Positions 7,770 to 22,511 of a stretch of 64,000 bases of DNA are shown in pieces. The stretch is taken from positions 232,328 through 296,327 of IMG/VR virus record IMGVR_UViG_3300017991_005548. One strand, written 5' to 3'. Within the stretch, counting starts at the first letter, position 1. Every line of letters starts with the position of its first letter. The notes beneath the pieces are model-generated. The model was given only the letters and a program-made list of their open reading frames with translations. It made no database searches and was not told where the DNA came from. Position numbers and translations under genes: made by a program.

Positions 7770-9605
7770 CTAAAATCTCATCCTAACAGTTACAGGTTCT
7801 GGAAGAGCAGGGTTCAGTCCATCAGTAGCAGAAGAAACAGCCCCTACTAAGCAATCAACTACATCATCTGTCTTCACATCTGCATTTTTATCTGGCAGAA
7901 GAGAAATTCCTCTTGCAATTCTTTTGAATTTTAAGTGTTGCATCTCTGCTAACATATATGAAGCATGTCCATCATCATCATAAAGATAAATTTCAGGATT
8001 TGGTTGATACTCCATCATCATCTTCATATTTCTATATAATTTCTGTTTAACACTTCTGTTATATTGAATCTTTTGACAATTTACTCCATGACTCCTCAAA
8101 AACTGCAAACTGTGTACAGACTGAAAGTCATCATAAGTAACTCTCAATGGTCTAAAGATTTTGCAAATAGTTAGAACATCTCTATCAATCTCATGGAATT
8201 GTAATCCAATACCTGGAACTGGTTTCCAGATCCATACGCCAGCTAATTCAACCATCCATCTCTTTTCCCCCTGATTGTTTCTATATTTCTTAGCGGCAAT
8301 CAAAACCATACTGAAGTTATTTCCGCCATTGGCTGGATCAACATGAGCATAATAATTGTATCCTGGTGCTGGTTTGGCATGAGGGCCAAGATCTGCCCTT
8401 ACACATCTTTCAAGCAATCCTTCCTCAAAATAGTTACCATAAATACCGCCACTAGCCCATTGAGCGCCATACTCAATAGCAAACATTTCTGGGTTACTCT
8501 CTCTATCACCAACCATCTCTTTGTTATAAAAATCAATATCATCATTTACACACCAAGTTGGCAACTGAAACGATAAGATAGAATCATCTTCTAATGATCT
8601 TCGATACATATCATAGAAAATACCCATCCTATTGTTCGGTGATGATATCATCACTATTCGAGCCGCATTATATTTGTAGAATTTAGATAATGATGGCTTT
8701 AATCTGTTGAAGAAATAGGTCCCTGTTACCTTACCACTCTCATCATAGAATGCAATCTCGTCAAACAGAATAAGAATAGCACTATATCCAGCAAGTGAGT
8801 CTGGATTACTATGACCACAAAGAAGTAGAATAGATCCCGCAACTTCAATGTCAACTCCCTGACTTTTCTTTTCTAAGTCAGAGTCAGTATACAAACGAAT
8901 CTCCGAAGAAATTGATTTAGCGATTCGTCCTTTGAAAAAAGGAGAGTTTCTAATTCTAGCCTGAATCTGTCCAAACAAACGTCCAGCCTGAGATTGTGAC
9001 AAGGCAACATTAATAATTGCAATTTCATCATCACTAGGTAGATTATAGTAGCTATGGGGATTACCCTCATTAATAACTAGTAACTTGTACGCTTCATACA
9101 CAGTTATGATTGAAGCCATCAAGGTTTTACTTCCACGTCTACCTAAGACAAGATGCAACATACTAAAATATTCAGGTCGTCTGTCTTCTGGCTTCTTCCC
9201 CTCATTTTCATCATTCCCCTTGGCCTTCTCATCGTGGAACCTGTCCATCTCGATCATTTTTTTGATAACCTCTTTGATGTTCCTTTCATAAGTAACACCT
9301 TCAAGAGTCTCATCTTCTTCATTACCGTAAAGCCACTCCCACTCTTCTTTATTGAGATGAAGGTCTTCATTTCCTATAGTGTTCTTGTAGAAGCACTTAA
9401 GGATAACTCTTTGGGAAGTCCAGAGATCAAGCTGATTCTCTTCTGATGGTAAGTTTAGGTAGTCTGGATGATCACAAAACGTTATGATATCGACTATCTC
9501 TTTGTAACCCTTGTTCTTTTTCAGAATCGGGTTTTTGGTATTAATCTGAAGTATTGCTTCTTCAAGTGGATTAATAGCTTTCTGCTTCTTCTGGCGACTC
9601 GACAT
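7770..9605 (-). CDS. terL: terminase large subunit (start revised to MSSRQ)
   Basis: Walker A-like LVLGRRGSKT, Walker B ILFDEIAFY, coupling motif ISSP, RNase H-like nuclease HVDPA...DDVVDC; GGAGG SD before ATG 9605. Confidence 0.88.
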   Translation of the reverse strand: MSSRQKKQKAINPLEEAILQINTKNPILKKNKGYKEIVDIITFCDHPDYLNLPSEENQLDLWTSQRVILKCFYKNTIGNEDLHLNKEEWEWLYGNEEDETLEGVTYERNIKEVIKKMIEMDRFHDEKAKGNDENEGKKPEDRRPEYFSMLHLVLGRRGSKTLMASIITVYEAYKLLVINEGNPHSYYNLPSDDEIAIINVALSQSQAGRLFGQIQARIRNSPFFKGRIAKSISSEIRLYTDSDLEKKSQGVDIEVAGSILLLCGHSNPDSLAGYSAILILFDEIAFYDESGKVTGTYFFNRLKPSLSKFYKYNAARIVMISSPNNRMGIFYDMYRRSLEDDSILSFQLPTWCVNDDIDFYNKEMVGDRESNPEMFAIEYGAQWASGGIYGNYFEEGLLERCVRADLGPHAKPAPGYNYYAHVDPANGGNNFSMVLIAAKKYRNNQGEKRWMVELAGVWIWKPVPGIGLQFHEIDRDVLTICKIFRPLRVTYDDFQSVHSLQFLRSHGVNCQKIQYNRSVKQKLYRNMKMMMEYQPNPEIYLYDDDGHASYMLAEMQHLKFKRIARGISLLPDKNADVKTDDVVDCLVGAVSSATDGLNPALPEPVTVRMRF

Positions 9606-10422
9606 AATATTCCTCCAATATATAAACACAACCATTGTCTGATGGACAAAAGGTCAGAATTTTATTTCCAACCTTATATATTTCAAACAAATGAGTCGCA
9701 TCTCCTTCAGAGGAAAGCATATGCACAGTATTGTCACTTAAAAAGAAAAGTTTGTTCTTGACATAATATATGTCTTTTAGGTCTTTGCAGTCATCGATAA
9801 TTGTGTACGTTGAGTTTTTTCGTATCCCCCTTAAGCAATTGTTACCACTGTCTGCAAAACAGACAGTTTTTCCCATTATTGCAACTCCAGTTGGTTTAGA
9901 AATCCTCGTATTTTTTAAATTTGATATTGAGAATCCAGCCTTACCACAACCTATAAGTGGAAAGGCGTTCTCCTCATTCATTATAAAGCATCTGTGACAA
10001 TTTGTAGTGCTCCAGATGACTTGATTTTCTAATGAAGTTACATAAGTCCTTGAGTCGCTTCTTCCAAGGACTTTTCTTCTAAATTGTTTAGCACTGTTTT
10101 TTGAGATCAAATTCTCAAAATCCATCAACTCCAAATCGACTTTGTGAATTCGGCTACCACCTTCTGAAACTATATATAAACAATCATAACTGGAATTATA
10201 GCATATCGAACTGAAAGTTGAAAAGTCTGGCTTCTCAGTATATGTGAGTTCATAACGCCAATCAGGATTGCAGTCGCCATTATTCATCTTTCCTATGCCA
10301 TCATCATGTAGGAAAAACAGATTATCCCCAACACAACAAAAATCCTTGATCTCGAAGTTGATCTCGAAATTTCGTTGTTTTCGGGTGGTAAGGTTCTTTT
10401 CTGTAAGTTTATAGATCATCAA
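9571..10422 (-). CDS. degenerate NHL-type beta-propeller protein
   Basis: LYIVSEGGSRIHKVD and KPTGVAIMGKTVCFADSGNNCLRGI resemble NHL repeats. Confidence 0.6.
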   Translation of the reverse strand: MMIYKLTEKNLTTRKQRNFEINFEIKDFCCVGDNLFFLHDDGIGKMNNGDCNPDWRYELTYTEKPDFSTFSSICYNSSYDCLYIVSEGGSRIHKVDLELMDFENLISKNSAKQFRRKVLGRSDSRTYVTSLENQVIWSTTNCHRCFIMNEENAFPLIGCGKAGFSISNLKNTRISKPTGVAIMGKTVCFADSGNNCLRGIRKNSTYTIIDDCKDLKDIYYVKNKLFFLSDNTVHMLSSEGDATHLFEIYKVGNKILTFCPSDNGCVYILEEYYVESPEEAESY

Positions 10423-11844: not shown

Positions 11845-14800
11845 TTACGAGTCTTTTTCGCTTAGCTTCTCACGTATGGATACTCCAAGTGCTCCGCTTT
11901 CACAATGACCGCCTGAGCAAGCGTCTCCAGCCCCGCCACCATAATTGTCTAAATTGCCATATTCATCTTCATAACATCCTGACCAGTCAACATCAATATA
12001 TGTTCTAGTCAGATCTAACCACTTCTTCCAGTTCGCGACATCTTTAAGGCAATATGTCATTTTTCTAACATCACCTTCAAAATAGCGATCTGCAAATTGT
12101 TTTGCCCTTCTGACCCAATCCAATTTTTCTTTGTAGTTTTCTACATTATGGTTAAGCCAAGCTTCAAGTAGTTTGTCTGGAGAGTCAGGGGACAATCCTT
12201 CGTTTTTCCACTTGATCCCATTTGTTTCAAAATCTCTGGAGATCTTATTTCTTAAAGGATCAACATAGATAATCTCTCCAATGCCAAGCAAACAATCACA
12301 AGCTTCCCAAAGATTGTCTTTAAATACTCTCAATCCGTCAACAATAAGACCGCTGGCGAATAAACTGCCATCCCCATACTCTCTGACGATCTCTGTGATG
12401 GTCATAACTGCCGTAAAAGGCGCTTGAGGGTAATCTTTGTCCCCAGACATAGGTAACATAGAAATTCCCGCATAATACCTTCTATTGCGATAAATGTGGT
12501 TAGCAACATCATCCCATTCATGTGGCTTGATGTTAATAGTGTTTGATACATTATGTCTTAGCCAAGGATAAATAGCCGTATCATGTCTTGTCCCTGACTC
12601 AACCCAATTCTGTTGAGTAAGCTTAACATTCTCAAGAAGAGTTATGGCACCGACCTGATTTTTGGTTTTGGCTCCATCAGGAACTTCGCATAAGAAGGTA
12701 ATAACAACATCAGTGTTATTATTTGACCATACTGATTCTTCGATAGCATCTGGGTTATGTTTTTCAAAATATTTCAGCGGAGTCTCAAGTTTGTTTGCTT
12801 GAACTCTCCTGAAATATCTTTTGGCATGATGAGGATGAATCCCAGATGCAGTTCCCAAAACACAACTCGTAGATCCAGCAGGCTTAACACATGTAGCTCT
12901 TGCACATAAATTGATGCCAAGTATTCCTGCAATCTTCTCATTAGTTTTAAGAATAAGTTTAGCACCCTTCCTTTGTAATGCAGGATCAAAGGCCATATCA
13001 GGATTATCTGCCATACCTGTCATAGAAACACCGAGAAGTGCCTCAAGCTTTACGATTTCCTGAGTGATGTTGCCCAAATAATGAAAGGTATCATACGAAG
13101 CTTGAATAGTGCCAATGATTGCCGCCGCTTTACAAGAGTCAAGAAAATCCTCTTCGGTTTTAACCTTCTTTACATTGATCTCACATAAATTGCAAAATTG
13201 CCATCCGCTAAGATATTCATTATTGTCCTGAGCGATAACAGCAGAGGCAAATTCTTTGCGGAATTGATCATTCAAAGGGAGCTTTGGGACCATGCCGATT
13301 TCAACACAGTTATGTACATAAACTCCGTTTCCATCGAACGCATGAACAACGGGAACAGTACAATCATATACTTTTTCAATCCCCTTACTCTCTTTAGAGG
13401 CAACTGTAGCTATGAATTTACTCTTATTTGGTTTTCTTTTATATTGACTCAACAAACTATCAAGTTTTTGAATTTTATATGGTTCTGAAAACCCGATCCT
13501 ATTTCTATAAACCCAAATAGATTCATTTGAAATAACAAGTTCATGGGCCGTTTGGCAAAAATAATCTTTTTTACCACCTTTTCCGTCAGGCATTGGTTTA
13601 AAACCCTCACCTCTACGGTTTTTATAAACTTTAGACACAATACCAAGGCGGAGGAGCATCCTTTGTACAGTTTTTAAATTGTTAAGAGAGATGCTGTGTA
13701 AACGTATTGACATCCCCTTCTTTAAATCGCCCTGGACAGATCCATCTGCATCAAAATACCCCTGAAGGAACCCTCTATACATATCTGAAGAACTTCCCTC
13801 TATTTTACACCCTATCTCCTTTTCACCACGTTTTATTCCGTAGTATTCTGCCATCTTTTTTAACCCAGAAGAATATAACCTTAATTTACCGACATTTGAC
13901 GTTTGTTTTCCTCCTGTCATTTCTTTATATGTATGAAGTCCTGACATTTTTATTCTTTTGATAGCCATCTTCATCATATGAGACCTTGACTCTCCCCAAT
14001 AGTCAAGCAATGCACTATTTTTAGTAAAGGTTCCGTCCCCAAGCAAACTGCCCAACAACCAACCTTTATCAAAGGTTTCATGAAACCCTTCTCCCTTCCA
14101 TGTAAGATTTTGGTGATTATGTAAAACTATTTGATCTCCAACGTTTAGGTCTTTCAGTTCAACCCAACCCTCTGGAGTCATTATCTGGTGATTACTGGTC
14201 GCCTCTATGCAAAATCCCTCTTTAGTTTCTAAACCAAAAAGCTCTTTTTCCCCAGTTTCAAACATCCCCTTTTTTGTAGTAGGATATACTTGACCATCAA
14301 CTATTGCTCCAAACTGTTTGCCCAAAAGATTTTTTGCTTTCTTCGGGCCATGATCTGTCATAACCCAAGTGTCACCACTAACACATGGATTATAAACGAT
14401 GTCATTACTTTCTGCCCAAACGAAGCCTGGTTCACCAAATTCTTTGTTCAATTCAATGAATTTCATGAACTGCTCTTTGGAGGTTTCGCTTCGCACTAAA
14501 ATAACAGAATTATTTGATCTTCCTCTTTGAGGATTCTCTTTGCGCCAAGCGCCAGTTTTGGCTTTTGCCATCTCTTCGTCTTCAGGAGAGAATAAACAAA
14601 TAGATGCACTGCGGCGAATTCCACCAGACAAAACAGCATCAGAGGAATGCATCATGATATCATAAGCATCAATTGGCCTAAGACAGTCACCAAACTTACA
14701 ACATCTATTAAGCAGAACATTGATATTATATAGTGATATTTTCAGTCCATCTGGTCCAGGGGCCTTGCTTCCTGAGGAAATTGGAGCACCTTCTGGTCGA

Positions 14801-15348
14801 ATTTGGGAAAAATCGAAGATCACTTCATATCCTTGATATTCTGGGAAAGGAACGTCATCTCCAATAAAAAATGAAGATAACAAAACCCCGACAGAATCGG
14901 CCCATCCTTCGATGCTGTCTGGGATTACGAAAGTCTTAGTCCCTTTAGTCGGGTTGGCTATGCCAGGAAGCTTCGCGACATGGTGGGTTTGAACTGAAAA
15001 TCCGATTCCACAACCACAAAGTAAAAGGAACATACCTTCTTGAAAAAATCTTGGTCTGTCACAATACGAGACCGTACAATTGTATAACTTCTCATGCTTG
15101 TCTAGAATTGGTTTCCCCCCAAACTGCAATGCCCTTTGAGATCCAAGAACCCTTTTTCTTCGAACCATTCGTTCTGCGAAATCCATTTCTTCTTTTAATT
15201 GCTCACAAATCTCTGGCCCAAGCTTCTTTCGATGCATGTCAAATACTCTAGTGACTTGTTCTTCCCAAGTCTCTCGTCTTTTCATCTCAGGTAGGTATTT
15301 GGCATACTTCGAAAAACGTGTATATTCTTGAAGTGCTCTGACGGACAT
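11845..15348 (-). CDS. nrdJ: class II (B12-dependent, monomeric RTPR-type) ribonucleotide reductase containing an intein
   Basis: RRETWEE, YNCT, GCGIGFS, IRRSA, NP|CVEI, QFCNLCE, TCVKPAGSTS and C-terminal C..G.C motifs. Confidence 0.93.
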   Translation of the reverse strand: MSVRALQEYTRFSKYAKYLPEMKRRETWEEQVTRVFDMHRKKLGPEICEQLKEEMDFAERMVRRKRVLGSQRALQFGGKPILDKHEKLYNCTVSYCDRPRFFQEGMFLLLCGCGIGFSVQTHHVAKLPGIANPTKGTKTFVIPDSIEGWADSVGVLLSSFFIGDDVPFPEYQGYEVIFDFSQIRPEGAPISSGSKAPGPDGLKISLYNINVLLNRCCKFGDCLRPIDAYDIMMHSSDAVLSGGIRRSASICLFSPEDEEMAKAKTGAWRKENPQRGRSNNSVILVRSETSKEQFMKFIELNKEFGEPGFVWAESNDIVYNPCVSGDTWVMTDHGPKKAKNLLGKQFGAIVDGQVYPTTKKGMFETGEKELFGLETKEGFCIEATSNHQIMTPEGWVELKDLNVGDQIVLHNHQNLTWKGEGFHETFDKGWLLGSLLGDGTFTKNSALLDYWGESRSHMMKMAIKRIKMSGLHTYKEMTGGKQTSNVGKLRLYSSGLKKMAEYYGIKRGEKEIGCKIEGSSSDMYRGFLQGYFDADGSVQGDLKKGMSIRLHSISLNNLKTVQRMLLRLGIVSKVYKNRRGEGFKPMPDGKGGKKDYFCQTAHELVISNESIWVYRNRIGFSEPYKIQKLDSLLSQYKRKPNKSKFIATVASKESKGIEKVYDCTVPVVHAFDGNGVYVHNCVEIGMVPKLPLNDQFRKEFASAVIAQDNNEYLSGWQFCNLCEINVKKVKTEEDFLDSCKAAAIIGTIQASYDTFHYLGNITQEIVKLEALLGVSMTGMADNPDMAFDPALQRKGAKLILKTNEKIAGILGINLCARATCVKPAGSTSCVLGTASGIHPHHAKRYFRRVQANKLETPLKYFEKHNPDAIEESVWSNNNTDVVITFLCEVPDGAKTKNQVGAITLLENVKLTQQNWVESGTRHDTAIYPWLRHNVSNTINIKPHEWDDVANHIYRNRRYYAGISMLPMSGDKDYPQAPFTAVMTITEIVREYGDGSLFASGLIVDGLRVFKDNLWEACDCLLGIGEIIYVDPLRNKISRDFETNGIKWKNEGLSPDSPDKLLEAWLNHNVENYKEKLDWVRRAKQFADRYFEGDVRKMTYCLKDVANWKKWLDLTRTYIDVDWSGCYEDEYGNLDNYGGGAGDACSGGHCESGALGVSIREKLSEKDS
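13309..14385 (-). mobile_element. intein (359 aa) with LAGLIDADG homing endonuclease
   Basis: Starts CVSGDTWV, ends VYVHN followed by Cys; internal LLGSLLGDG and FLQGYFDADG motifs. Confidence 0.95.
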
Positions 15349-15359
15349 AAAGTGTCTCC

Positions 15360-16580
15360 TTATTTCTCTATTAAATCTTCTACAAAACTACTGACAACTT
15401 CGAACATAAACTGCTTTACATCCCCCCTAAAGTCATCCACATCATCGATTGGTTGATCCAATCGTTTCAATAACTCTCTCCCATCTTCAACAATGTCTTC
15501 TGTGTCATCAAACGTTTGCAGTTTTATCAGAGCATCTTTGATTTCATCATGCACTTGCAATCTCCAGGGTTCTTTGCGATAAATATCACTACAATTTAAC
15601 AATCTCAAGTCATGAACTTGGTTTTTGTCTGAAAAATTTCTGGAGATATGATAGCTATGAGTTGTTGTGATGATTTGACTATCCTCAAAACATCTTTTCA
15701 TAGCCCTGATTAAAGGTAAATGTCTTCCACTTTCAACATGCATTTCTACATTATCTATTAGGATTATAGATGGGACGTATTCTAAATTCAAAAGAGAAGA
15801 AAATGTTTTCATGATTTTCCTCTCTCCATCGCTACATTCTTTATAGTGAATTGTTTCATTGGGTTTGTGTACGTAGAACCCGAACACATACTCTTTTTTA
15901 ATTCTGGAGTTTCCGACAGAGAATTCCGTTTCTTCTTCTTCTATCTCAAATCCAGTTACAGCTTCAAACAATTCTTTGAAGATCACCCATTTACCTCTGT
16001 CCAATTGGAACTTTCTTAGCTCCTGATCAAATCGAGTGAAGTAACATAATCTCATTACGAGATTTCTGATTTTTTCAGGGTGTCCTTTCTTAAATCCCTC
16101 CTTAGTGAGTATAACTTCATAATCTCCCAAAGATGTCCCCAGAGTTGCCCTAATGCAGAAGTCGGCATCCCCATAAACACCTGACTTATCCCCTCCTTCC
16201 ACATGACGAACAGCCTTACCAAGTATGGATTTTAGACGAACTTCATCATATTGTTCGTAATTAGTAAAAAGGGAGTAAATAATTTCAAGGGTTGTTGACT
16301 TTCCACAGCCATTGGGTCCGATAAAACAGGCAAAATTGCTGGTTTCATCTTTATAAGTAAAGTCTATTAAGAAGTCATGGAAGATTTTATAGTCTCTTAT
16401 GTAGAGACGCTTCACTTTGACGTAAGGAAAATCTTTCTCTGAGAAATTGGGCATAGCAGAAATGAGCTTCTGAAGGTCATCAGTGACATTTGTCTCATTG
16501 GTTACCTGATCTTCGGCACAATCAAACTCAGTTTTGTTCTCTATGAAAAAATCTTTACCTTTTGTCGTCACTTCGTCCAT
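15360..16580 (-). CDS. ABC/SMC-type (AAA_15/AAA_21-like) ATPase
   Basis: GPNGCGKST Walker A, SDGERK signature, ILIDNVEMH Walker B/D-loop, TTTHS H-loop. Confidence 0.88.
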   Translation of the reverse strand: MDEVTTKGKDFFIENKTEFDCAEDQVTNETNVTDDLQKLISAMPNFSEKDFPYVKVKRLYIRDYKIFHDFLIDFTYKDETSNFACFIGPNGCGKSTTLEIIYSLFTNYEQYDEVRLKSILGKAVRHVEGGDKSGVYGDADFCIRATLGTSLGDYEVILTKEGFKKGHPEKIRNLVMRLCYFTRFDQELRKFQLDRGKWVIFKELFEAVTGFEIEEEETEFSVGNSRIKKEYVFGFYVHKPNETIHYKECSDGERKIMKTFSSLLNLEYVPSIILIDNVEMHVESGRHLPLIRAMKRCFEDSQIITTTHSYHISRNFSDKNQVHDLRLLNCSDIYRKEPWRLQVHDEIKDALIKLQTFDDTEDIVEDGRELLKRLDQPIDDVDDFRGDVKQFMFEVVSSFVEDLIEK

Positions 16581-16743
16581 ACTTGCCTCCGCATAACTTC
16601 TTTGTTACTGTTCTATCAATAATCATTCGTCGTTTTTCATATTCAGTTTCAGGTTCAGGTGCAGGTTTATTTTCTGTATTTACTCTTGCACCATCTGGCA
16701 CATGGACATAGAATCCACCCAATTCATATTTTTCATCATTCAT
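16555..16743 (-). CDS. small hypothetical protein
   Basis: 62-aa ORF packed between co-oriented genes. Confidence 0.5.
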   Translation of the reverse strand: MNDEKYELGGFYVHVPDGARVNTENKPAPEPETEYEKRRMIIDRTVTKKLCGGKYGRSDDKR

Positions 16744-16747
16744 TCTA

Positions 16748-17218
16748 TTACCAATCCAAAGATCTGAGTTCTTCAGTAAGTATTCTGGGCAGTAGACTTA
16801 TGTGAAATTTAAATTTTGCAACATTTCCGAGAACTGTTACACCAAACTTTCTATGAGTTTTTGACGATATCGCCTCAATATAATCTTGTGCTTCTAATTT
16901 AGAGGTTAACTCTACAAATTGGCTGATATTCTCTCTTACCAAGAACTCTCCCAAGAAGTCGATCATGAAAGTGGAGAAGAACTCTTTCTCATATTTGATG
17001 TAGGTTTCTCTATCAAACCCCATATCATCCATGAATACTGAGAAAGTGATATCTTCGGTATCAATCGCTTCTTCATTTTCATTTTGAGACTGGACAAAAG
17101 AAAGAGATCTGATTTGAGGCTTCGTTTTTATAAAGCGCTCAATCATTTCTCGACAATGAAAACACTTGCCTCCATTCGAGTCTTGAAACAACTTATTGTT
17201 TGTTTGCTCTTTATTCAC
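16748..17218 (-). CDS. hypothetical protein with CxxC
   Basis: 156-aa ORF containing CFHC. Confidence 0.65.
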   Translation of the reverse strand: MNKEQTNNKLFQDSNGGKCFHCREMIERFIKTKPQIRSLSFVQSQNENEEAIDTEDITFSVFMDDMGFDRETYIKYEKEFFSTFMIDFLGEFLVRENISQFVELTSKLEAQDYIEAISSKTHRKFGVTVLGNVAKFKFHISLLPRILTEELRSLDW

Positions 17219-17285: not shown

Positions 17286-17753
17286 CTAGAACTTTATTGT
17301 CATTTTTAGGCCGACCTTTAAATTTTTCTTAAGTTTATCTCCGATTTCTTGGATATCGTCGTTCATATAGTCTGGACCTTCGCCTTCTTTGAAAGGTGTA
17401 AGTCCAATATCTGGTCTGACATGTTTCTTTATAAAATTACCTATTCTTCCCAATCTCGTCTTGGGTCTTTTGTCGAATTCTGTCTCTTGAACTGGCTCAA
17501 CACTCTCTAAAATTTCTTTCTTTTCTTCGTCTGTAAGTCTAAATATCTCGGTTTTAGTTGGCGGTTTTGAGTCTTCCGTTTCGACTATTTCCACCTTATC
17601 CTCTGAAGTTCCAAAAAGAGAGTTCAAATCGTCTTGGACATCTTCCAGTTTTTCCGTCTCTTTTTGTTTTTGAAGTGCTTTTTCGGCTTCTCTAGCTTCT
17701 TTCTCCCGCCGTCTTCTCTCTTTTCTTTCTCGGAGTTTTCGTAGTAATCCCAT
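17286..17753 (-). CDS. hypothetical protein with basic N-terminus
   Basis: 155-aa ORF, first gene of the leftward block. Confidence 0.65.
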   Translation of the reverse strand: MGLLRKLRERKERRRREKEAREAEKALQKQKETEKLEDVQDDLNSLFGTSEDKVEIVETEDSKPPTKTEIFRLTDEEKKEILESVEPVQETEFDKRPKTRLGRIGNFIKKHVRPDIGLTPFKEGEGPDYMNDDIQEIGDKLKKNLKVGLKMTIKF

Positions 17754-17836
17754 GTGAAAGGTTTTTCTCGATTTTAGTTAGAATTATTGGTAAGTTATAG
17801 TTCAAAAAAGTCAAGTTAAAAACCTGTATCTGAAAA

Positions 17837-18613
17837 ATGATTAACAACAAAAATAATTGGTATTCTGAGGCTAGAGAAGCCTCTTTAATCGTTCAAGAAG
17901 CTGGTATCACTGATAACTGGAAAACATTGGTGTTTGCGGTTGCACTTGTTTTATCAGGGTTATCTCTAATTGATGTATCTGAGAAGACTGGATTACCACC
18001 TGAACAAATACAACAAGCCCTCAATAATAAAGAAATAGTTGAACAAGCTCAAAATCAGGAAGAATCATCAATGCCTAGATTAGATTTCTCTGGAATCGAG
18101 GAATTAATTCGACAGCATGAAGTTTCTGGTGCCGAAAGGTATGTTAGAGTTAAAGGTAAAAACGTTGACATAAGAAAAGCATATCCTGATCCTATTCATG
18201 GATGGAAAGTTCCAACCATTGGTGTTGGTTATAATTTAAACAAACCTGAAGCCAGAGGGGAAATTGAAGCTCTAGGACTAGATTATGACAAAGTCCGTAA
18301 AGGAGAGCAAGCCCTAACTGATGAACAGGTAAATATACTATACCGAGACGATATAGCAAAAGCAATACTTTCTGCAAGAAGATTCCTACCGAATTTCGAT
18401 CAACAACCAACTGAAGTAAAAACAGTAATCGTAGACATGGCTTTTAATTTAGGTGAAACCCGATTGAGAAAATTTAAAAAATTCAGGAAAGCGCTCGAAA
18501 ACAACAATTATCAAGAAGCCGCAGAAGAGATGAAAAACTCTAGGTGGTATCATCAAGTTGGGAATAGAGCGAAAAGAAACGTTGAAAAAATGTTGGAATT
18601 TCACTCCAAATAG
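17837..18613 (+). CDS. GH24/T4-type lysozyme with N-terminal hydrophobic segment
   Basis: LIRQHE...YPD...PTIGVGYNL, IVDMAFNLG, EEMKNSRWYHQVGNRA. Confidence 0.9.
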   Translation: MINNKNNWYSEAREASLIVQEAGITDNWKTLVFAVALVLSGLSLIDVSEKTGLPPEQIQQALNNKEIVEQAQNQEESSMPRLDFSGIEELIRQHEVSGAERYVRVKGKNVDIRKAYPDPIHGWKVPTIGVGYNLNKPEARGEIEALGLDYDKVRKGEQALTDEQVNILYRDDIAKAILSARRFLPNFDQQPTEVKTVIVDMAFNLGETRLRKFKKFRKALENNNYQEAAEEMKNSRWYHQVGNRAKRNVEKMLEFHSK

Positions 18614-18759
18614 CCTATTTTTTCTCCCAGAATCGTAACACTTATATAATACTATATCTTACTTATTAATATAATAACTTATTATAATAATAAAGGCGAA
18701 ACCCAACTTTCACAAACCATTGATAACTTTATTGTTACATAAGTGCTATTTATTTTTCG

Positions 18760-18867
18760 TTAGTAAAAATTACTAACCCTTGAGCCACACTTTAGTAAAA
18801 ATTACTAACGAAAAATTAAAGATTAGTAAAAATTACTAATTTGCCATTTTTTAGTAAAAATTACTAA
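18760..18867. repeat. four identical 17-bp palindromic units TTAGTAA-AAA-TTACTAA
   Basis: Copies at 18760-76, 18792-808, 18823-39 and 18851-67 in a roughly 400-bp non-coding gap. Confidence 0.95.
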
Positions 18868-19016
18868 TTTGCAAAAATCTTGCATTTTTTCTTGGAATCA
18901 GAAAATGTGGTTGTATAATGACAATATGCTTTCGAAACCAATTGTTTTGAAAGTGAACCCTTCCTAGCGGGGTATAGGCTAGAGAGCGAGAGACATAATA
19001 AAAGGAGAAAAGTATC

Positions 19017-19940
19017 ATGTCTAATGAAACGCCCACCGACTCTTGGGAGTCAAGAATCAACCAAGTTGCTAAGATCCTTAGCAAAACCCCAGATGACATT
19101 GAGGAAATCCTCAGTGCAGATCCGTTCAGAATTACTCAGGACCCAAACCGTCTTGAGATGCTGGCGGATGAAGAAGTAACCCCATTCGGAGATCTTCGCA
19201 AGATGTTTTGCGATGAGAATGGAGTTTCCCTACCCCAATTACGTATGTGCATGAAAGTATTACGTGGACCTAAAGGTAGCCAGAAGGCTTCTGAAATGGA
19301 TACAAACGTACTTGCTTTCAATGCTAAGTATGGATTGGAAACTCATGTAGAAGATCTGGACATTGAACAGATCCTCCCATTCTACAATCCCAAAAAGCGC
19401 AATAGAATTCATGAACTCATTCGTGATCGTTATGAAAGTGAGTTCGGCCCTGTTATCGCTTTCAAACCGAACTCTGAAAAGATTGCTGTTGAAGAAACAC
19501 TTGATTACATTGCTGATCTTGAATCTGGCCTTCCAGCAGAAGAAAGTATCGAGGTAGATGGGGAACTTGTCCGTCTTTATAAAGTTGGAGAAGTTCCAAA
19601 CGAAAAGGTCGATGAAGATCCACTCTTCCCAGACTGTCCATTGAGAAAAGGCCGTTCTACTCATAACAGAGTGAATTGGACTGACATCTCAATAGAAGTT
19701 CGTCAATTCTTCCGCATTCTTCATGAGTATTCTGAGGATATCGATCCAAACAATCGTCTTGAACTACGTAAAGTGGTTCGTCTTCCTCTTGATGAACTTA
19801 GAGAAATCTTCCCAGAAATCTATTTGATTTACAAAGAGCTTAAGGCAGACAACAAACTGCCAAGTTTGAAGATGTCTTTAAGAACCGTTACTTCAAGAAC
19901 GCAAAATCCATTTGCCATTGGCAGAAACAGAACTCGATAA
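19017..19940 (+). CDS. hypothetical protein (307 aa)
   Basis: AAGGAG SD; long ORF followed by a hairpin. Confidence 0.8.
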   Translation: MSNETPTDSWESRINQVAKILSKTPDDIEEILSADPFRITQDPNRLEMLADEEVTPFGDLRKMFCDENGVSLPQLRMCMKVLRGPKGSQKASEMDTNVLAFNAKYGLETHVEDLDIEQILPFYNPKKRNRIHELIRDRYESEFGPVIAFKPNSEKIAVEETLDYIADLESGLPAEESIEVDGELVRLYKVGEVPNEKVDEDPLFPDCPLRKGRSTHNRVNWTDISIEVRQFFRILHEYSEDIDPNNRLELRKVVRLPLDELREIFPEIYLIYKELKADNKLPSLKMSLRTVTSRTQNPFAIGRNRTR

Positions 19941-19946
19941 AAATAT

Positions 19947-19980
19947 AAGGGAGTGGGGTTATCCTCACTCCCTTTACTTT
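19947..19980 (+). terminator. hairpin terminator
   Basis: AAGGGAGTGGGG-TTAT-CCTCACTCCCTT followed by TACTTT. Confidence 0.7.
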
Positions 19981-19994
19981 CTGGGAGAATAATT

Positions 19995-21140
19995 ATGAAA
20001 AATTTTGATACCGTATGGGATTATGAATACTGGATGAAATCCAATGGGATGTTTGTTGGACTAAATACCCCCGAAGCTCTTAAGTCCGAAGATTTTAATC
20101 ATGGTCTGCCACCATATGCTAGAAGAAAATCATTTCTAGTAGATGAATACCCAGCTTGCCCTAAAAACTGGATGCAAAGTGAAGGAACGTTAGCCAGTTA
20201 TTTTGTTCCTGTAAAAGAAGGTAATGGAATGTGGTTAGATTTCAATAAAAACTATGACCATGACTATGATGTGGCTATCGTCATTTCAATTCAAGGTGTA
20301 AACCCAATTTCAGGTTTACCTTGTAAAGATGAATATCTGGAGCAATACATTGAATGTTGTCCAAAATGCGAGACTCCTTTCAAACCAGATAGGTTGTGTG
20401 AGAAGTGTAACATTAGATATCCTAAGCAGAATTATATTGCTACAACTACAACTCCAAAAGGCAAACTTTGGCTTGATGGGTTCAGAAGTTTAGAGGGTAT
20501 CGTTCGTCAATACATTTTAACAGCAGAAAAAATGAGAGGTGTCGCATCTAACGTAAAAGGAGTTGGGAGCAATAGAGTGTTCGCTATTGGAGTCTCTTTC
20601 TTTTTAAGTAAGGAAAAGAAACCAGTATATGAATCTTCATCTTCGTCTTCATCATGGGGGTTCCCATGTTCATCATCTTCTTCGTCTTCTATTGGAAGTG
20701 CATCATCATCTTCGATTCCTGACGCTTATGAAGATGATGACGACGATTACACATATTTGGATATGGATTTTGAAAGTATAAGTAGCGCTGACAACAAATC
20801 CAGTGAGAGTTACAAGATTACATGTGACAACTCTGACATACATAAAGTTTTTTCCAAAAAATCACGTCTCTCTAAACCACAACGTTCAGCCAAACCAGTA
20901 ACTTGCAACTTTATCCAACAAGTTAAAACCAAAAAGCTTGAGGTTGGTGCTGGAGCGAACATTGATCAACAGGTTTATGATGATAACGAAAAGATTGATT
21001 TCTGGAGAAGTGAACCTGAAGCCAGAATTTGCGTAAATTACGTCCTTGAGGAAGACGCAGTTAAGATCATTGAGCAAGGAAGAAGAATATTGGAAGGCCA
21101 CAAGGAAGGCTTTCTGCAAAACGTACCAGTAGGAAATTAA
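19995..21140 (+). CDS. uncharacterised conserved protein (QNY...WLDG...RQ / GAG...Q.VY.D...W family), with CxxC pairs and a Ser/Asp insert; start revised
   Basis: GGGAG SD before ATG 19995; QNYIA...LWLDGF...GIVRQY and LEVGAGANIDQQVYDD...FW; CPKC and CEKC. Confidence 0.65.
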   Translation: MKNFDTVWDYEYWMKSNGMFVGLNTPEALKSEDFNHGLPPYARRKSFLVDEYPACPKNWMQSEGTLASYFVPVKEGNGMWLDFNKNYDHDYDVAIVISIQGVNPISGLPCKDEYLEQYIECCPKCETPFKPDRLCEKCNIRYPKQNYIATTTTPKGKLWLDGFRSLEGIVRQYILTAEKMRGVASNVKGVGSNRVFAIGVSFFLSKEKKPVYESSSSSSSWGFPCSSSSSSSIGSASSSSIPDAYEDDDDDYTYLDMDFESISSADNKSSESYKITCDNSDIHKVFSKKSRLSKPQRSAKPVTCNFIQQVKTKKLEVGAGANIDQQVYDDNEKIDFWRSEPEARICVNYVLEEDAVKIIEQGRRILEGHKEGFLQNVPVGN

Positions 21141-21151
21141 GGAGAATTAAA

Positions 21152-21850
21152 ATGCCTAGAGAAGATTATACCCATTTAGTTTTTGTCGTTGATCGTTCTG
21201 GATCTATGTCTGGAATCGCATCAACAATGTGTGAAGGATATAACGGACTTATGGTTGATCAAAGAGAAGTCGATGGTAAAGCAACCGTCACATTAGCTCA
21301 ATTTGATGACCGATATGAGTTGTTATATGATATGGTTGACATTGAGACCGTTCCAGAGCTTACATTGCAACCAAGAGGCTGTACGGCCCTTCTGGACGCA
21401 ATGGGAAGGACCATGAATACTGTCTTAGAACAGATTATGGAGATGGAAGAGTCTGAAAGACCAGCAAGATGTCTGTTTGTTACCATTACTGACGGTGGAG
21501 AAAATTCATCAATGGAATATACCAGAGATCGGATTTTCCAAATGATCCAGGATTGCCAGGAAAGAGACGATATTAACTTTGACTTCACTTTCCTTGGAGC
21601 TAACCAAGATGCTATCGCTGTTGGTGGAGGTCTTGGTATTCGTCAAGATGCGGCTTTGACTTATGCCGCAAACAATGTCTCTGCTCAAGCAATGTGCGAT
21701 ACTTTGTCAAGAAGCATGACGCAGTATAGATGTTGTAAATCTAGGGATGCTTCATTGAGTTATTCTCTTGAAGATCGGGAAAATGTATTGGGAGAAAACC
21801 CCCTTGTCCCTGACATCGATTCTGATGTAATCAAGAATTTCAAGAAATAA
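21152..21850 (+). CDS. von Willebrand factor A domain protein
   Basis: MIDAS motif VVDRSGSM, TALLDA, ITDGGENSS, FLGANQDA. Confidence 0.92.
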   Translation: MPREDYTHLVFVVDRSGSMSGIASTMCEGYNGLMVDQREVDGKATVTLAQFDDRYELLYDMVDIETVPELTLQPRGCTALLDAMGRTMNTVLEQIMEMEESERPARCLFVTITDGGENSSMEYTRDRIFQMIQDCQERDDINFDFTFLGANQDAIAVGGGLGIRQDAALTYAANNVSAQAMCDTLSRSMTQYRCCKSRDASLSYSLEDRENVLGENPLVPDIDSDVIKNFKK

Positions 21851-21938: not shown

Positions 21939-22511
21939 ATGGGTAAAGAAGACACCAATCCCTGCAACAATCTTGAAGACAACCGAATTATTTATGTAAA
22001 TGGAAATTTCAACGAAGAAATGACCAAGAACATATATGAAAAGCTAATAGCACTGGAAACAAAAGATCCTAGAAAAGACATTTTCATGGTCATTGACTCT
22101 TATGGTGGATACTGCCACAGCTTCCTTGCAATTCATGATGCCATGAAAATGTGTAGGTGTGATGTTGCAACGTTTTGTATTGGGAAAGCTATGTCATGTG
22201 GGCAAATGTTATTGATGTCTGGGACTAAGGGTAAGAGATTTGCCTCCCCAAATTGCAGAATACTTGTCCATCAACTTTCTAGTGCTTGTTGGGGAACTTT
22301 GTCAGAAATGCAGGTCGAAGTTACTGAGAGTGAAGAAATCCAGAAAATTATGGACAAAATCATTCTTGAGAACACTGGGATGACCAAAAGGGAATTAAAA
22401 AAGCTGATGTCAAGAGATTCTTATCTATCTCCAGAAGAAGCTATAGAATTTGGAATTGTTGATAAGGTCGTTACCAGTTATAAAGACATTTACAAAACGG
22501 TAAAAATCTAA
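21939..22511 (+). CDS. clpP: ClpP-family protease
   Basis: IDSYGG, catalytic Ser AMSCG, His ILVHQ, RD.YLSPEEAIEFGIVD. Confidence 0.93.
   Translation: MGKEDTNPCNNLEDNRIIYVNGNFNEEMTKNIYEKLIALETKDPRKDIFMVIDSYGGYCHSFLAIHDAMKMCRCDVATFCIGKAMSCGQMLLMSGTKGKRFASPNCRILVHQLSSACWGTLSEMQVEVTESEEIQKIMDKIILENTGMTKRELKKLMSRDSYLSPEEAIEFGIVDKVVTSYKDIYKTVKI

What the first reader, a model, noticed from the sequence alone, without database searches (positions are those of the whole stretch)
18614..19016. Candidate replication origin or operator array: AT-rich tract plus four phased 7-3-7 palindromes
Seen: the largest non-coding gap in the window holds four exact copies of TTAGTAA-AAA-TTACTAA, whose halves are reverse complements. 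Start-to-start spacing is 32, 31 and 28 bp, about three helical turns. Upstream is an almost pure A/T tract (about 18640-18695) with three TATAATA units. Copies 1 and 2 have extended symmetry (ATTTTTCG...CGAAAAAT), and copies 3 and 4 are both followed by TTTGC. Known: iterons plus an unwinding element define lambda and plasmid origins. Inference: a binding array for a dimeric initiator or repressor; a packaging site is also possible.
Basis: partly seen in the sequence, partly recalled or inferred. Interest (0 to 1): 0.72.

Follow-up and report, generated by a model that had tools for sequence, protein, structure and literature searches.

The report
Operator array before a phage promoter
Four identical 17-bp palindromes in an uncultivated huge phage are most likely docking sites for a still unknown dimeric regulator of a conserved operon promoter, and there is no support for a replication origin.

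Summary
The window belongs to an uncultivated huge phage of at least 508 kb.

The array lies 46 nt upstream of a (G)TATAAT promoter. That promoter drives a conserved operon of a 307-aa protein, a 395-aa protein, a VWA protein and a ClpP-like protease.

The 17-mer is absent from the rest of the 296-kb record. A longer 476-kb assembly of the same phage has three more loci with pairs of it. Two pairs sit 47 nt from a -10-like hexamer, as in the window.

In relatives, 20 of 29 homologous upstream regions carry two to six GTA-N5-TAC sites. Their outer bases differ by lineage, mostly on both half-sites, and their spacing is roughly helically phased. One relative has lost the 307-aa and 395-aa genes yet keeps five exact sites before the promoter.

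The strand-specific GC3 bias does not change sign at the array. I found no DnaA box, ParA, ParB or integrase.

My verdict is an operator array of an unidentified regulator, probably phage-encoded and probably an activator. The leader RNA also holds a conserved pseudoknot with no Rfam match.

The parts
17837..18613 (+). Upstream gene: a 258-aa protein with a hydrophobic segment near the N-terminus and a phage-lysozyme domain. Its stop codon opens the control region.
   Evidence: Pfam Phage_lysozyme, E 1.8e-7. PHROGs endolysin and tail-lysozyme families. Found on the same strand upstream of the 307-aa gene in 18 related loci.
18640..18695 (.). Conserved A/T-rich tract (89% A/T). It holds two 16-nt direct repeats (18661-18692), the 12-bp perfect palindrome TTATTATAATAA (18679-18690) and three TATAATA units. 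Its role is unknown.
   Evidence: The block TTATAATAATAAGG(C/G)G is conserved in L016, L018 and L019, and more loosely in L006. It is also present in L108. It lies 65-69 nt before the distal site in the window, L016 and L108. Its motifs occur nowhere else in the 296-kb record.
18760..18776 (.). Site 1 (distal), TTAGTAAAAATTACTAA. Its centre is 146 bp before the first base of TATAAT.
18792..18808 (.). Site 2. Its centre is 114 bp before the first base of TATAAT.
18823..18839 (.). Site 3, the distal member of the promoter-proximal pair (28-bp spacing). Its centre is 83 bp before the first base of TATAAT.
   Evidence: The same 28-bp pair recurs at the three other loci of the phage.
18851..18867 (.). 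Site 4 (proximal). Its centre is 55 bp before the first base of TATAAT, about -67 from the inferred transcription start.
   Evidence: The distance from the end of the last site to the -10 is 46 nt here, 47 nt at L060 and 47 nt at L062.
18868..18891 (+). A/T-rich spacer (TTTGCAAAAATCTTGCATTTTTTC) where an UP element would lie.
   Evidence: The equivalent segment is 65-92% A/T in the relatives.
18892..18919 (+). Promoter: -35-like TTGGAA (18892-18897), a 16-nt spacer, then (G)TATAAT (18913-18919).
   Evidence: Consensus scan, 10 of 12 matches. TATAAT is kept in nearly all relatives, while the -35 varies from 2 to 6 matches of 6. GTATAAT is the most enriched 7-mer upstream of genes in this genome, at 13.7 times expectation.
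18929..18992 (+). Structured 5' leader. Hairpin 18929-18953, then an H-type pseudoknot: CCC 18958-18960, CTAGC 18964-18968, GGG 18969-18971 and GCTAG 18978-18982. A purine-rich tail AGAGCGAGAG follows. The Shine-Dalgarno GGAG is at 19004-19007.
   Evidence: All five stem pairs are Watson-Crick in 27 of 27 lineages, with 3-4 pair types each. The CCC/GGG pairing changes on both sides in five lineages. No Rfam match. The motif is unique in 508 kb.
19017..19940 (+). First gene of the operon: a 307-aa protein of unknown function. It belongs to a widespread family seen so far only in metagenomes.
   Evidence: 96 homologues, none named. No Pfam or PHROGs hit. The AF2 model has pLDDT 82 and no significant fold match. 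The gene is absent from L108.
19953..21140 (+). Second gene: 395 aa from a GTG start, or 381 aa from the ATG at 19995. It has a beta-rich N-terminal domain with a CxxC...CxxC motif, a Ser/Asp-rich low-complexity middle and a conserved C-terminus.
   Evidence: The only significant fold matches are uncharacterised AlphaFold DB clusters.
21152..21850 (+). Third gene: a 232-aa protein with a von Willebrand factor A domain.
   Evidence: phrog_7371, E 1.5e-55. The Pfam VWA match is just under its cut-off. In L108 this is the first gene after the array.
21939..22511 (+). Fourth gene: a 190-aa ClpP-family protease, similar to phage head-maturation proteases.
   Evidence: Pfam CLP_protease, E 1.3e-52. 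phrog_94 head maturation protease, E 4.7e-34.

Best explanation
The four palindromes are operator sites for a sequence-specific dimeric DNA-binding protein. The protein is most likely encoded by the phage and has not been identified.

Together with pairs of the same 17-mer at three other loci, the sites form a small regulon in a phage genome of at least 508 kb.

In the window the array sits upstream of the core promoter. Its centres lie about 55, 83, 114 and 146 bp before the first base of the TATAAT. This promoter belongs to the genome-wide GTATAAT class and drives the operon of the 307-aa protein, the 395-aa protein, the VWA protein and the ClpP-like protease.

I infer that the bound dimers act from this fixed upstream position on RNA polymerase. 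The promoter-proximal pair, spaced 28 bp, would be the basic module, and the two further sites spaced about three helical turns would add cooperativity. The most likely effect is to recruit or stabilise the polymerase, that is, upstream activation or timing of a highly expressed operon.

Shown:
- The sites exist and are conserved in relatives.
- Their outer bases differ by lineage, mostly on both half-sites.
- They do not depend on orientation.
- They keep a fixed distance to the -10.
- They recur at other loci of the same phage.

Inferred:
- A protein dimer binds them.
- That protein is phage-encoded.
- The effect is activation rather than repression.
For: Chance and genome-wide distribution
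- The four exact copies are far beyond chance.
- The joined 508-kb sequence holds 10 exact copies and 1 near copy, all at four loci. Simulated sequences give 0-6 matches with up to 2 mismatches in the 14 half-site positions, a threshold at which the real genome has 12.

Link to promoters
- The distance from the last site to the -10 is 46 nt in the window.
- It is 47 nt to an exact TTGTATAAT before a 118-aa gene at L060.
- It is 47 nt to a weaker TATTTT at L062.
- The asymmetric centre AAA points towards the -10 at these three promoters.
- GTATAAT is the dominant promoter-like element of this genome. It is found upstream of 22 of 126 genes, 13.7 times expectation. Of 62 occurrences, 35 lie less than 150 nt before a start on the same strand.

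Relatives
- GTA-N5-TAC occurs at 6.7 per kb in the 320 bp upstream of the homologous gene, against 0.17 per kb in the rest of those loci. Twenty of 29 loci have at least two.
- L016, whose 307-aa protein is 74% identical, keeps four identical 17-mers with spacing 31, 31 and 28 bp, although the spacers have diverged.
- L018 (67% identical) has TTTGTAAAAAATACAAA at the same positions. One of its two changes is mirrored in the other half-site.
- Other lineages carry ATAGTAA..TACTAT, CCAGTAA..TTACTGG, GCGGTAA..TTACCG or GAGGTAG..TACCTC.
- Sites occur in both orientations within one locus in L009, L036 and L045.
- L108 has lost the 307-aa and 395-aa genes. It keeps five exact sites, the A/T tract and the promoter before the VWA gene. 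Its proximal site is moved by 9 bp, about one helical turn.

Specificity to phages
- No pair of the 17-mer occurs in 185,579 bacterial and archaeal species genomes.
- L018 comes from the same sample as the window's contig but has a different site. This points to phage-encoded specificity.
Against: - The binding protein is not identified. No gene next to any of the four loci has a recognisable DNA-binding domain. The only HTH_3 match in the genome is below its cut-off.
- Sites that lie wholly upstream of a promoter with a perfect -10 and a fair -35 do not prove activation.
- The 28-bp spacing of the proximal pair is not an integral number of helical turns.
- In more distant lineages the distance from the proximal site to the -10 varies (centres 64, 68, 76 and 88 bp upstream), and not always in whole turns.
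- The pair at L061 fits no promoter.
- Seven lineages, and the GC-rich distant relatives, have the operon without any array.
- There are no expression data. The public runs hold the phage only as assembled contigs.
Confidence: 0.5

Rival explanations
1. The same protein and the same operator array act negatively. The bound dimers gate or silence the operon. They could block read-through from the lysozyme gene and from the two -10-like TATAAT elements inside the A/T tract. Alternatively they could cover the A/T-rich UP-like segment until a later stage of infection.
For: - The promoter already has a perfect TATAAT and a 4-of-6 -35 at 16 nt, so it may not need an activator.
- No terminator-like hairpin separates the lysozyme gene from the array.
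- Four cooperative sites, and operator specificities that diverge between related phages in one sample, are typical of repressor and immunity systems (general knowledge of lambdoid phages).
Against: - No site overlaps the core promoter at any of the three promoters. A fixed 46-47 nt distance upstream of the -10 is not needed for a roadblock.
- The L060 promoter has no recognisable -35.
- There is no integrase, and no HTH_3 repressor above its cut-off, in 508 kb. A lysogeny-type immunity region is therefore unlikely.
Confidence: 0.25
2. The array is a replication origin. The palindromes are boxes for a phage initiator that also acts as a transcription factor at the other three loci, as DnaA does. 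The neighbouring A/T tract is the unwinding element, and the adjacent promoter activates the origin.
For: - This is the largest cluster of the motif (4 sites, against 1-3 elsewhere).
- A conserved 89% A/T tract with tandem 16-mers lies at a conserved 65-69 nt from the distal site.
- The array lies about 1 kb from the point where a run of some 460 kb of mostly leftward genes ends. The cumulative GC skew flattens there.
- About 30% of huge phage genomes are reported to show skew patterns of unidirectional replication, which leaves no switch to find (PMC7162821).
Against: - The motif is not unique to this locus.
- The sites are dyads at 3-turn spacing, or 5-6 turns in relatives with two sites. 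They are not direct iterons.
- The array keeps its distance to the promoter rather than to any replication gene.
- Several relatives lack it.
- The orientation-independent GC3 component is -0.077 to the left and -0.092 to the right of the array, so there is no sign change.
- GC skew follows the coding strand everywhere.
- There is no DnaA box within 17500-19300.
- The adjacent 307-aa protein has no initiator-like fold and is absent from L108.
Confidence: 0.1
3. The sites bind a host nucleoid-associated or global regulator that the phage exploits at a few strong promoters. Fis sites upstream of rrnB P1 are the model.
For: - The geometry resembles rrnB P1. Several sites lie upstream of an A/T-rich UP-like segment, and each site has an A/T-rich centre (general knowledge).
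- No phage-encoded binder was found.
Against: - The copies are exact 17-mers, not a degenerate consensus.
- The outer bases differ between related phages from the same sample.
- No pair of sites occurs in any of 185,579 species genomes.
- The conserved G and C lie 5 bp from the centre, not 7 bp as in the Fis consensus (read from the sequence, compared with the published consensus from memory).
Confidence: 0.05
4. The array is a partition centromere, a terminase recognition (pac) site or a site-specific recombination site.
For: Phased identical palindromes recall F sopC. Dispersed palindromic centromere sites are known in phage N15, and P1 pac is built from repeated short palindromes (general knowledge).
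Against: - No ParB_N and no AAA_31 (ParA-type) match in 508 kb.
- No tyrosine recombinase.
- The large terminase gene is 9 kb away on the other strand.
- Four dispersed loci with a fixed distance to a -10 do not fit a single pac site.
- No read ends could be examined.
Confidence: 0.04

Closest known systems
Upstream (class I type) activator sites, for example Fis sites I-III with the UP element at E. coli rrnB P1, or phage phi29 protein p4 upstream of the late promoter A3
   Same: Dyad sites for a dimer lie wholly upstream of the -35, at a fixed distance from the -10. There are several roughly helically phased copies and an A/T-rich segment between the proximal site and the -35. In L108 the site has moved by about one helical turn.
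   Different: The binding protein is unknown, and activation has not been shown. The sites are exact 17-mers, not a loose consensus. The proximal pair is spaced 28 bp, which is not a whole number of turns. The polymerase or sigma factor that reads GTATAAT promoters in this phage is unknown, although the genome has three sigma-70-like ORFs.
Lambdoid repressor operators (OR and OL: three 17-bp pseudo-palindromes), and the four Xre operators of the Bacillus prophage PBSX
   Same: Each site is a 17-bp dyad with 7-bp half-sites. There are three or four sites per control region. Operator specificity differs between related phages.
   Different: None of the sites here overlaps the core promoter. The flanking genes point the same way, not apart. 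No repressor or Cro-like gene lies nearby. The genome has no integrase.
Iteron origins (lambda ori, the P1, F and pSC101 replicons)
   Same: A cluster of repeated protein-binding sites lies next to an A/T-rich tract and a promoter.
   Different: The sites are dyads rather than direct iterons, and they are spaced 3 turns apart rather than 2. The motif recurs at other promoters. No initiator gene is recognisable next to the array. The compositional skew does not switch there.
Translational operators in phage leaders, for example the pseudoknot in the T4 gene 32 leader (comparison for the 5' UTR element only)
   Same: A compact H-type pseudoknot lies in the leader of a probably highly expressed gene and is conserved across relatives.
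   Different: It has no sequence or Rfam relationship to any known element. Its ligand or binding protein is unknown. The 307-aa product does not have an OB fold.

Membership tests
Iteron-type replication origin | The cluster of initiator-binding repeats is the only such cluster in the replicon | tested here: not met
   The motif is unique in the 296-kb record. The 476-kb assembly has six more exact copies and one near copy at three further loci.
Iteron-type replication origin | An A/T-rich unwinding element lies next to the repeats | tested here: met
   The tract 18640-18695 is 89% A/T and has tandem 16-mers. It is conserved in L016, L018, L019, L006 and L108. Unwinding itself cannot be tested here.
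Iteron-type replication origin | The repeats are direct and about two helical turns apart | tested here: not met
   The sites are perfect dyads spaced 28-32 bp. Relatives with two sites have them 53-64 bp apart.
Iteron-type replication origin | An initiator gene (Rep, O or DnaA-like) lies next to or around the repeats | tested here: not met
   The 307-aa protein has no Pfam or PHROGs family and no significant fold match. L108 keeps the array without this gene.
Iteron-type replication origin | Strand compositional bias switches at the site (bidirectional origin) | tested here: not met
   The orientation-independent GC3 component is -0.077 to the left and -0.092 to the right of the array. The cumulative skew only flattens where gene orientation becomes mixed. 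This test says nothing about unidirectional replication.
Iteron-type replication origin | Replication starts there in vivo (coverage peak, replication intermediates) | not testable with these tools
   The public runs hold the phage only as assembled contigs with flat word depth.
Upstream activator sites (class I type) | A dimer site is centred upstream of the -35 at a fixed distance from the core promoter | tested here: met
   The distance from the end of the last site to the -10 is 46 nt in the window, 47 nt at L060 and 47 nt at L062. The proximal centre lies 53-54 bp before the TATAAT in L016, L018 and L019, against 55 bp in the window. L108 is moved by 9 bp.
Upstream activator sites (class I type) | The sites lie on one face of the helix relative to each other | tested here: inconclusive
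   Spacings cluster at 30-34, 52-54 and 64 bp. The mean resultant length is 0.52 at a 10.5-bp period, from 39 spacings. The recurring 28-bp pair is 2.7 turns.
Upstream activator sites (class I type) | An identified activator protein raises transcription | not testable with these tools
   No binder was identified. No RNA data are available.
Lambdoid-type repressor operators | A 17-bp dyad site bound by a dimer | tested here: met
   The site is a 7-3-7 perfect dyad, and the outer bases change mostly on both half-sites in relatives. Binding by a dimer is inferred.
Lambdoid-type repressor operators | The operators overlap the core promoter or promoters they control | tested here: not met
   All four sites end at least 46 nt upstream of the -10, and at least 24 nt upstream of the -35-like hexamer.
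Lambdoid-type repressor operators | An HTH repressor gene lies nearby, in a temperate genome | tested here: not met
   The only HTH_3 match is below its cut-off and more than 160 kb away. There is no tyrosine integrase in 508 kb.
Partition centromere (sopC, parS or parC type) | A cognate ParB or ParR and a ParA-type ATPase are encoded in the replicon, usually next to the site | tested here: not met
   No ParB_N and no AAA_31 match in either record. ParM, TubZ and ribbon-helix-helix ParR types were not tested.
Terminase recognition site (pac or cos) | A single site in or beside the small terminase gene, where packaging cuts start | tested here: not met
   There are four dispersed loci. The large terminase gene is at 7770-9635 on the other strand. 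DNA ends could not be examined.

The most novel reading that the evidence does not exclude
The array, the conserved A/T palindrome and the leader pseudoknot together form a two-level control unit specific to one clade of uncultivated huge phages. An as yet unrecognised family of dimeric DNA-binding proteins, whose specificity co-evolves with its operators, would set transcription. A new class of cis-regulatory RNA, the hairpin plus H-type pseudoknot with no Rfam match, would set translation of a family of unknown function. A further possibility that the evidence does not exclude is that the DNA-binding protein also starts unidirectional replication at the largest site cluster.
Probability: 0.2. 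Interest if true: 0.6.

Novelty: new member of a known kind. Interest (0 to 1): 0.38.

Why it matters
Almost nothing is known about gene regulation in uncultivated phages of around 500 kb.

This locus offers a concrete, testable regulatory circuit:
- a defined 17-bp operator;
- a fixed operator-to-promoter geometry;
- a four-locus regulon;
- natural specificity variants in relatives;
- a genome-wide -10-only promoter motif (GTATAAT), in a genome that also has three sigma-factor-like ORFs.

It also points to a conserved operon of unknown function as probably highly expressed and tightly controlled. Its leader carries a structured RNA that no database describes.

As a kind of element it is ordinary, being transcription factor sites upstream of a promoter. 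It does not locate the replication origin.

Tried and rejected
- Megablast of the locus against GenBank phages found nothing. By protein search, the only relatives are unannotated huge phages, LR756511 and LR745208. The distant LR756511 homologue has a plain TTGACA-17-TATGAT promoter and no array.
- Rfam, at E-values up to 10 over 18400-19200 and up to 0.1 over the three other loci, gave only chance miRNA hits.
- Structure prediction and fold searches did not name a function for either operon protein:
  - For the 307-aa protein I searched PDB with Foldseek, PDB with VIA-align, AlphaFold DB clusters, BFVD and the ESM Atlas. There was no significant match outside its own uncharacterised family.
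  - For the 395-aa protein the only significant matches were uncharacterised clusters. The p53-like and Rel-like rows had E about 1 and TM below 0.25, so I ignored them.
- Pfam on all neighbours of the four loci found no DNA-binding domain. The binder stays unknown.
- The 118-aa gene behind the L060 promoter has no homologue, so conservation of the regulon could not be tested through it.
It was uninformative.
- The sequencing runs hold the phage only as contigs. I could get no read ends, no coverage profile and no RNA.
- I considered an RNA-hairpin reading of the palindromes. I rejected it because sites occur in both orientations within one locus and lie upstream of the promoter.
- I rejected the Fis consensus, CIRCE and TyrR boxes by inspecting the sequence against consensus sequences recalled from memory.
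- I did not run complex prediction. No candidate binder was credible enough, and jobs with DNA get no verdict.

Full report
**1. The observation**

The window has four exact copies of TTAGTAAAAATTACTAA at 18760, 18792, 18823 and 18851, spaced 32, 31 and 28 bp. In 100 dinucleotide-preserving shuffles, matches with up to three mismatches averaged 0.48 and never exceeded 3.

The extended symmetry around copies 1 and 2 is real, as is the TTTGC after copies 3 and 4. So is the A/T tract, which is 89% A/T with three TATAATA units.

With ORFs of at least 50 aa called, 18614-19016 is the largest gap in the window. Only two gaps in the whole 296-kb record are longer, and both are filled with tRNA genes.

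**2. Context**

The window is the last 64 kb of a 296,327-bp IMG/VR record with 38% GC and 46 tRNA genes. The same phage is present in a 476-kb IMG/VR record and a 524-kb metagenome contig. Joining the two viral records gives 508 kb.

The nearest GenBank entries are unannotated huge phages of 485 and 595 kb. The window also holds the large terminase, a ribonucleotide reductase and virion proteins.

The order of features across the region is:
- a lysozyme-domain protein (17837-18613);
- the gap;
- a 307-aa protein, a 395-aa protein, a VWA protein and a ClpP-family protease similar to head-maturation proteases.

All of these genes are on the + strand. This gene order, together with three leftward genes further upstream, is conserved in dozens of metagenomic relatives.

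**3. What lies between the array and the gene**

A promoter, TTGGAA-16-TATAAT, ends at 18919, 46 nt after the last site. The TATAAT, usually preceded by G, is kept in nearly all relatives. The -35 varies from 2 to 6 matches of 6, and the segment upstream of it is A/T-rich.

GTATAAT is the most enriched 7-mer upstream of genes in this genome. It occurs upstream of 22 of 126 genes, 13.7 times expectation. Of 62 occurrences, 35 lie less than 150 nt before a start on the same strand, mostly about 40 nt before, and without a common -35. The promoter behind the array therefore belongs to a genome-wide class. The longer record also has three sigma-70-like ORFs.

**4. Relatives**

I fetched 54 loci encoding homologues of the 307-aa protein. 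In the 320 bp upstream of the gene, GTA-N5-TAC occurs at 6.7 per kb, against 0.17 per kb in the rest of the same loci. Twenty of 29 distinct loci have two or more.

- L016, whose protein is 74% identical, has the same four 17-mers with spacing 31, 31 and 28 bp, although the spacers between them have diverged.
- L018 (67% identical, from the same sample) has four TTTGTAAAAAATACAAA at the same positions. One of its two changes is mirrored in the other half-site.
- Other lineages carry ATAGTAATATCTACTAT (six or more copies), CCAGTAATTTTTACTGA (four), ACGGTAGAATTTACCG (three), GAGGTAG..TACCTC, or AAAATAGTAACTTTAACTATTTT (five).

Within L009, L036 and L045 the site occurs in both orientations. Together with the position upstream of the promoter, this shows a double-stranded DNA site and not an RNA hairpin.

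Spacings cluster near 3, 5 and 6 helical turns, with a recurring 28-bp pair. Seven lineages, and the GC-rich distant relatives, have the operon without any array.

**5. The motif is not unique to this locus**

Within the 296-kb record there is no other copy with up to three mismatches. The 476-kb record, however, has exact copies at three more loci. They lie at its coordinates 1466 and 1494; 15474, with a two-mismatch copy at 15502; and 31698, 31726 and 31973. All are pairs with the same 28-bp spacing as copies 3 and 4 of the window, and the last locus has one additional single site.

- At L060 the pair is followed after 47 nt by an exact TTGTATAAT, and then by a 118-aa gene.
- At L062 the pair is followed after 47 nt by TATTTT.
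- At these two loci and in the window, the central AAA points towards the -10.
- The pair at L061 fits no promoter.

In two 52-kb partial relatives, and in L010 and L108, the motif occurs only at the homologous locus. Those records are 12-42% complete.

**6. A natural deletion**

A scan of IMG/VR for the 17-mer found one other clustered occurrence, L108, on a 24-kb contig. It has five exact copies, the same A/T tract and a TTGTATAAT 55 nt after the last site. The gene that follows is the VWA homologue, and the 307-aa and 395-aa genes are missing.

The array therefore goes with the promoter and the operon, not with the 307-aa gene. Neither missing protein is likely to be the binder. The 9-bp shift of the proximal site is about one helical turn.

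**7. Origin tests**

Cumulative GC skew over 508 kb falls steadily and flattens from about the array onwards, but skew follows the coding strand everywhere. I separated the orientation-independent component at third codon positions. It is -0.077 to the left and -0.092 to the right of the array, so the sign does not change. The gene calls behind this figure are crude, and only 25 genes lie to the right.

There is no DnaA box in 17500-19300. There is no ParB_N, no AAA_31 and no tyrosine integrase in 508 kb.

A share of huge phage genomes is reported to show skew patterns of unidirectional replication, which leaves no switch to find (PMC7162821). This part of the origin hypothesis cannot be excluded.

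**8. Who binds**

The binder is unknown. Pfam finds no DNA-binding domain in the neighbours of any of the four loci. The one HTH_3 match is below its cut-off. The models of the 307-aa and 395-aa proteins have no significant match outside uncharacterised families.

Three things point to a phage-encoded factor:
- No pair of the 17-mer occurs in 185,579 species genomes.
- The copies are exact.
- A different variant occurs in a related phage from the same sample.

**9. Mechanism**

The best reading is an operator array of a dimeric regulator acting on a GTATAAT promoter from a fixed upstream position. The centres lie about 67 and 95 bp upstream of the inferred transcription start, with two further sites at 126 and 158 bp.

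I favour activation or recruitment for three reasons. The sites never overlap the core promoter. The distance is fixed to within 1 bp at three promoters of the same genome. The L060 promoter also lacks a -35.

Repression or gating is the main rival. The role of the conserved A/T tract, with its 12-bp palindrome TTATTATAATAA, remains unexplained.

**10. The leader**

Between the promoter and the start codon lie a hairpin and an H-type pseudoknot. The five pairs of the main stem are Watson-Crick in 27 of 27 lineages, with 3-4 pair types each.

The CCC/GGG pairing is kept in 80 of 81 cells and changes on both sides in five lineages. Controls with the pairing register shifted also pair well, because of runs of C.

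There is no Rfam match, and the motif occurs once in 508 kb.

**11. Verdict**

The feature is real and conserved. As a kind of element it is ordinary: transcription factor operators upstream of a promoter. It sits in an almost unstudied group of phages, its regulator is unidentified, and a leader RNA that no database describes lies beside it.

Noticed in passing
window 18929-18992: The 5' leader of the 307-aa gene folds into a hairpin plus a compact H-type pseudoknot (CCC / CTAGC / GGG / GCTAG), followed by AGAGCGAGAG. The main stem covaries perfectly in 27 lineages. The leader has no Rfam match and occurs once in 508 kb. It may be a new cis-regulatory RNA.
   Followed up: partly
whole 296-kb record; in the window for example 3740(-), 6580(-), 18913(+), 55842(+): GTATAAT is a genome-wide promoter-like element that usually lacks a -35. 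Of 62 occurrences, 35 lie less than 150 nt before a start on the same strand, typically about 40 nt before. The longer record has three sigma-70 region 4 ORFs at G003 72.7, 73.5 and 133 kb.
   Followed up: partly
L060 (G003 1382-1944) and L062 (G003 31585-32296): Two large intergenic regions (563 and 712 bp) hold pairs of the 17-mer. They also hold other repeated motifs: TTTAGGGAACCC in L060 and CATTCMGTGCRT in L062 (four copies). These look like sites for further regulators. No ORF of 50 aa or more follows the L062 promoter-like element, so it may drive a non-coding RNA.
   Followed up: partly
L108 4300-4800 (IMGVR_UViG_3300025770_001283): In this relative the 307-aa and 395-aa genes are absent. 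Five exact sites, the A/T tract and the promoter sit directly before the VWA gene, and only a remnant (CCTTCC) of the leader pseudoknot is left.
   Followed up: yes
G000 197395-197469 (outside the window): Among the 46 tRNA genes of the record, one has a CUA anticodon, which would read the amber codon. ARAGORN labels it tRNA-Pyl. The ORFs of the window read normally under code 11, so I saw no sign of recoding there.
   Followed up: no
window 29464-42294 (-): A 4276-aa ORF is full of in-frame repeats. Its coding-strand GC skew is opposite to that of nearly all other genes. The 476-kb and 524-kb assemblies both end inside it, at about window position 31569.
   Followed up: no
window 11845-15348 (-): A 1167-aa ribonucleotide reductase matches its family in two separate stretches, with an unrelated segment around residues 343-413. 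This may be an inserted element such as an intein.
   Followed up: no
window 15360-16580 (-), with 16555-16743 and 16748-17218: An AAA_21/AAA_15 ATPase and two small ORFs of unknown function are kept in the same order upstream of the lysozyme gene in 19-25 related loci.
   Followed up: no
G000 and G003 as wholes: IMG/VR classes both records as proviruses. I found no tyrosine integrase, ParA (AAA_31) or ParB_N in 508 kb, and the sequence looks viral throughout. The two assemblies differ by 368 bp somewhere in the part they share.
   Followed up: partly
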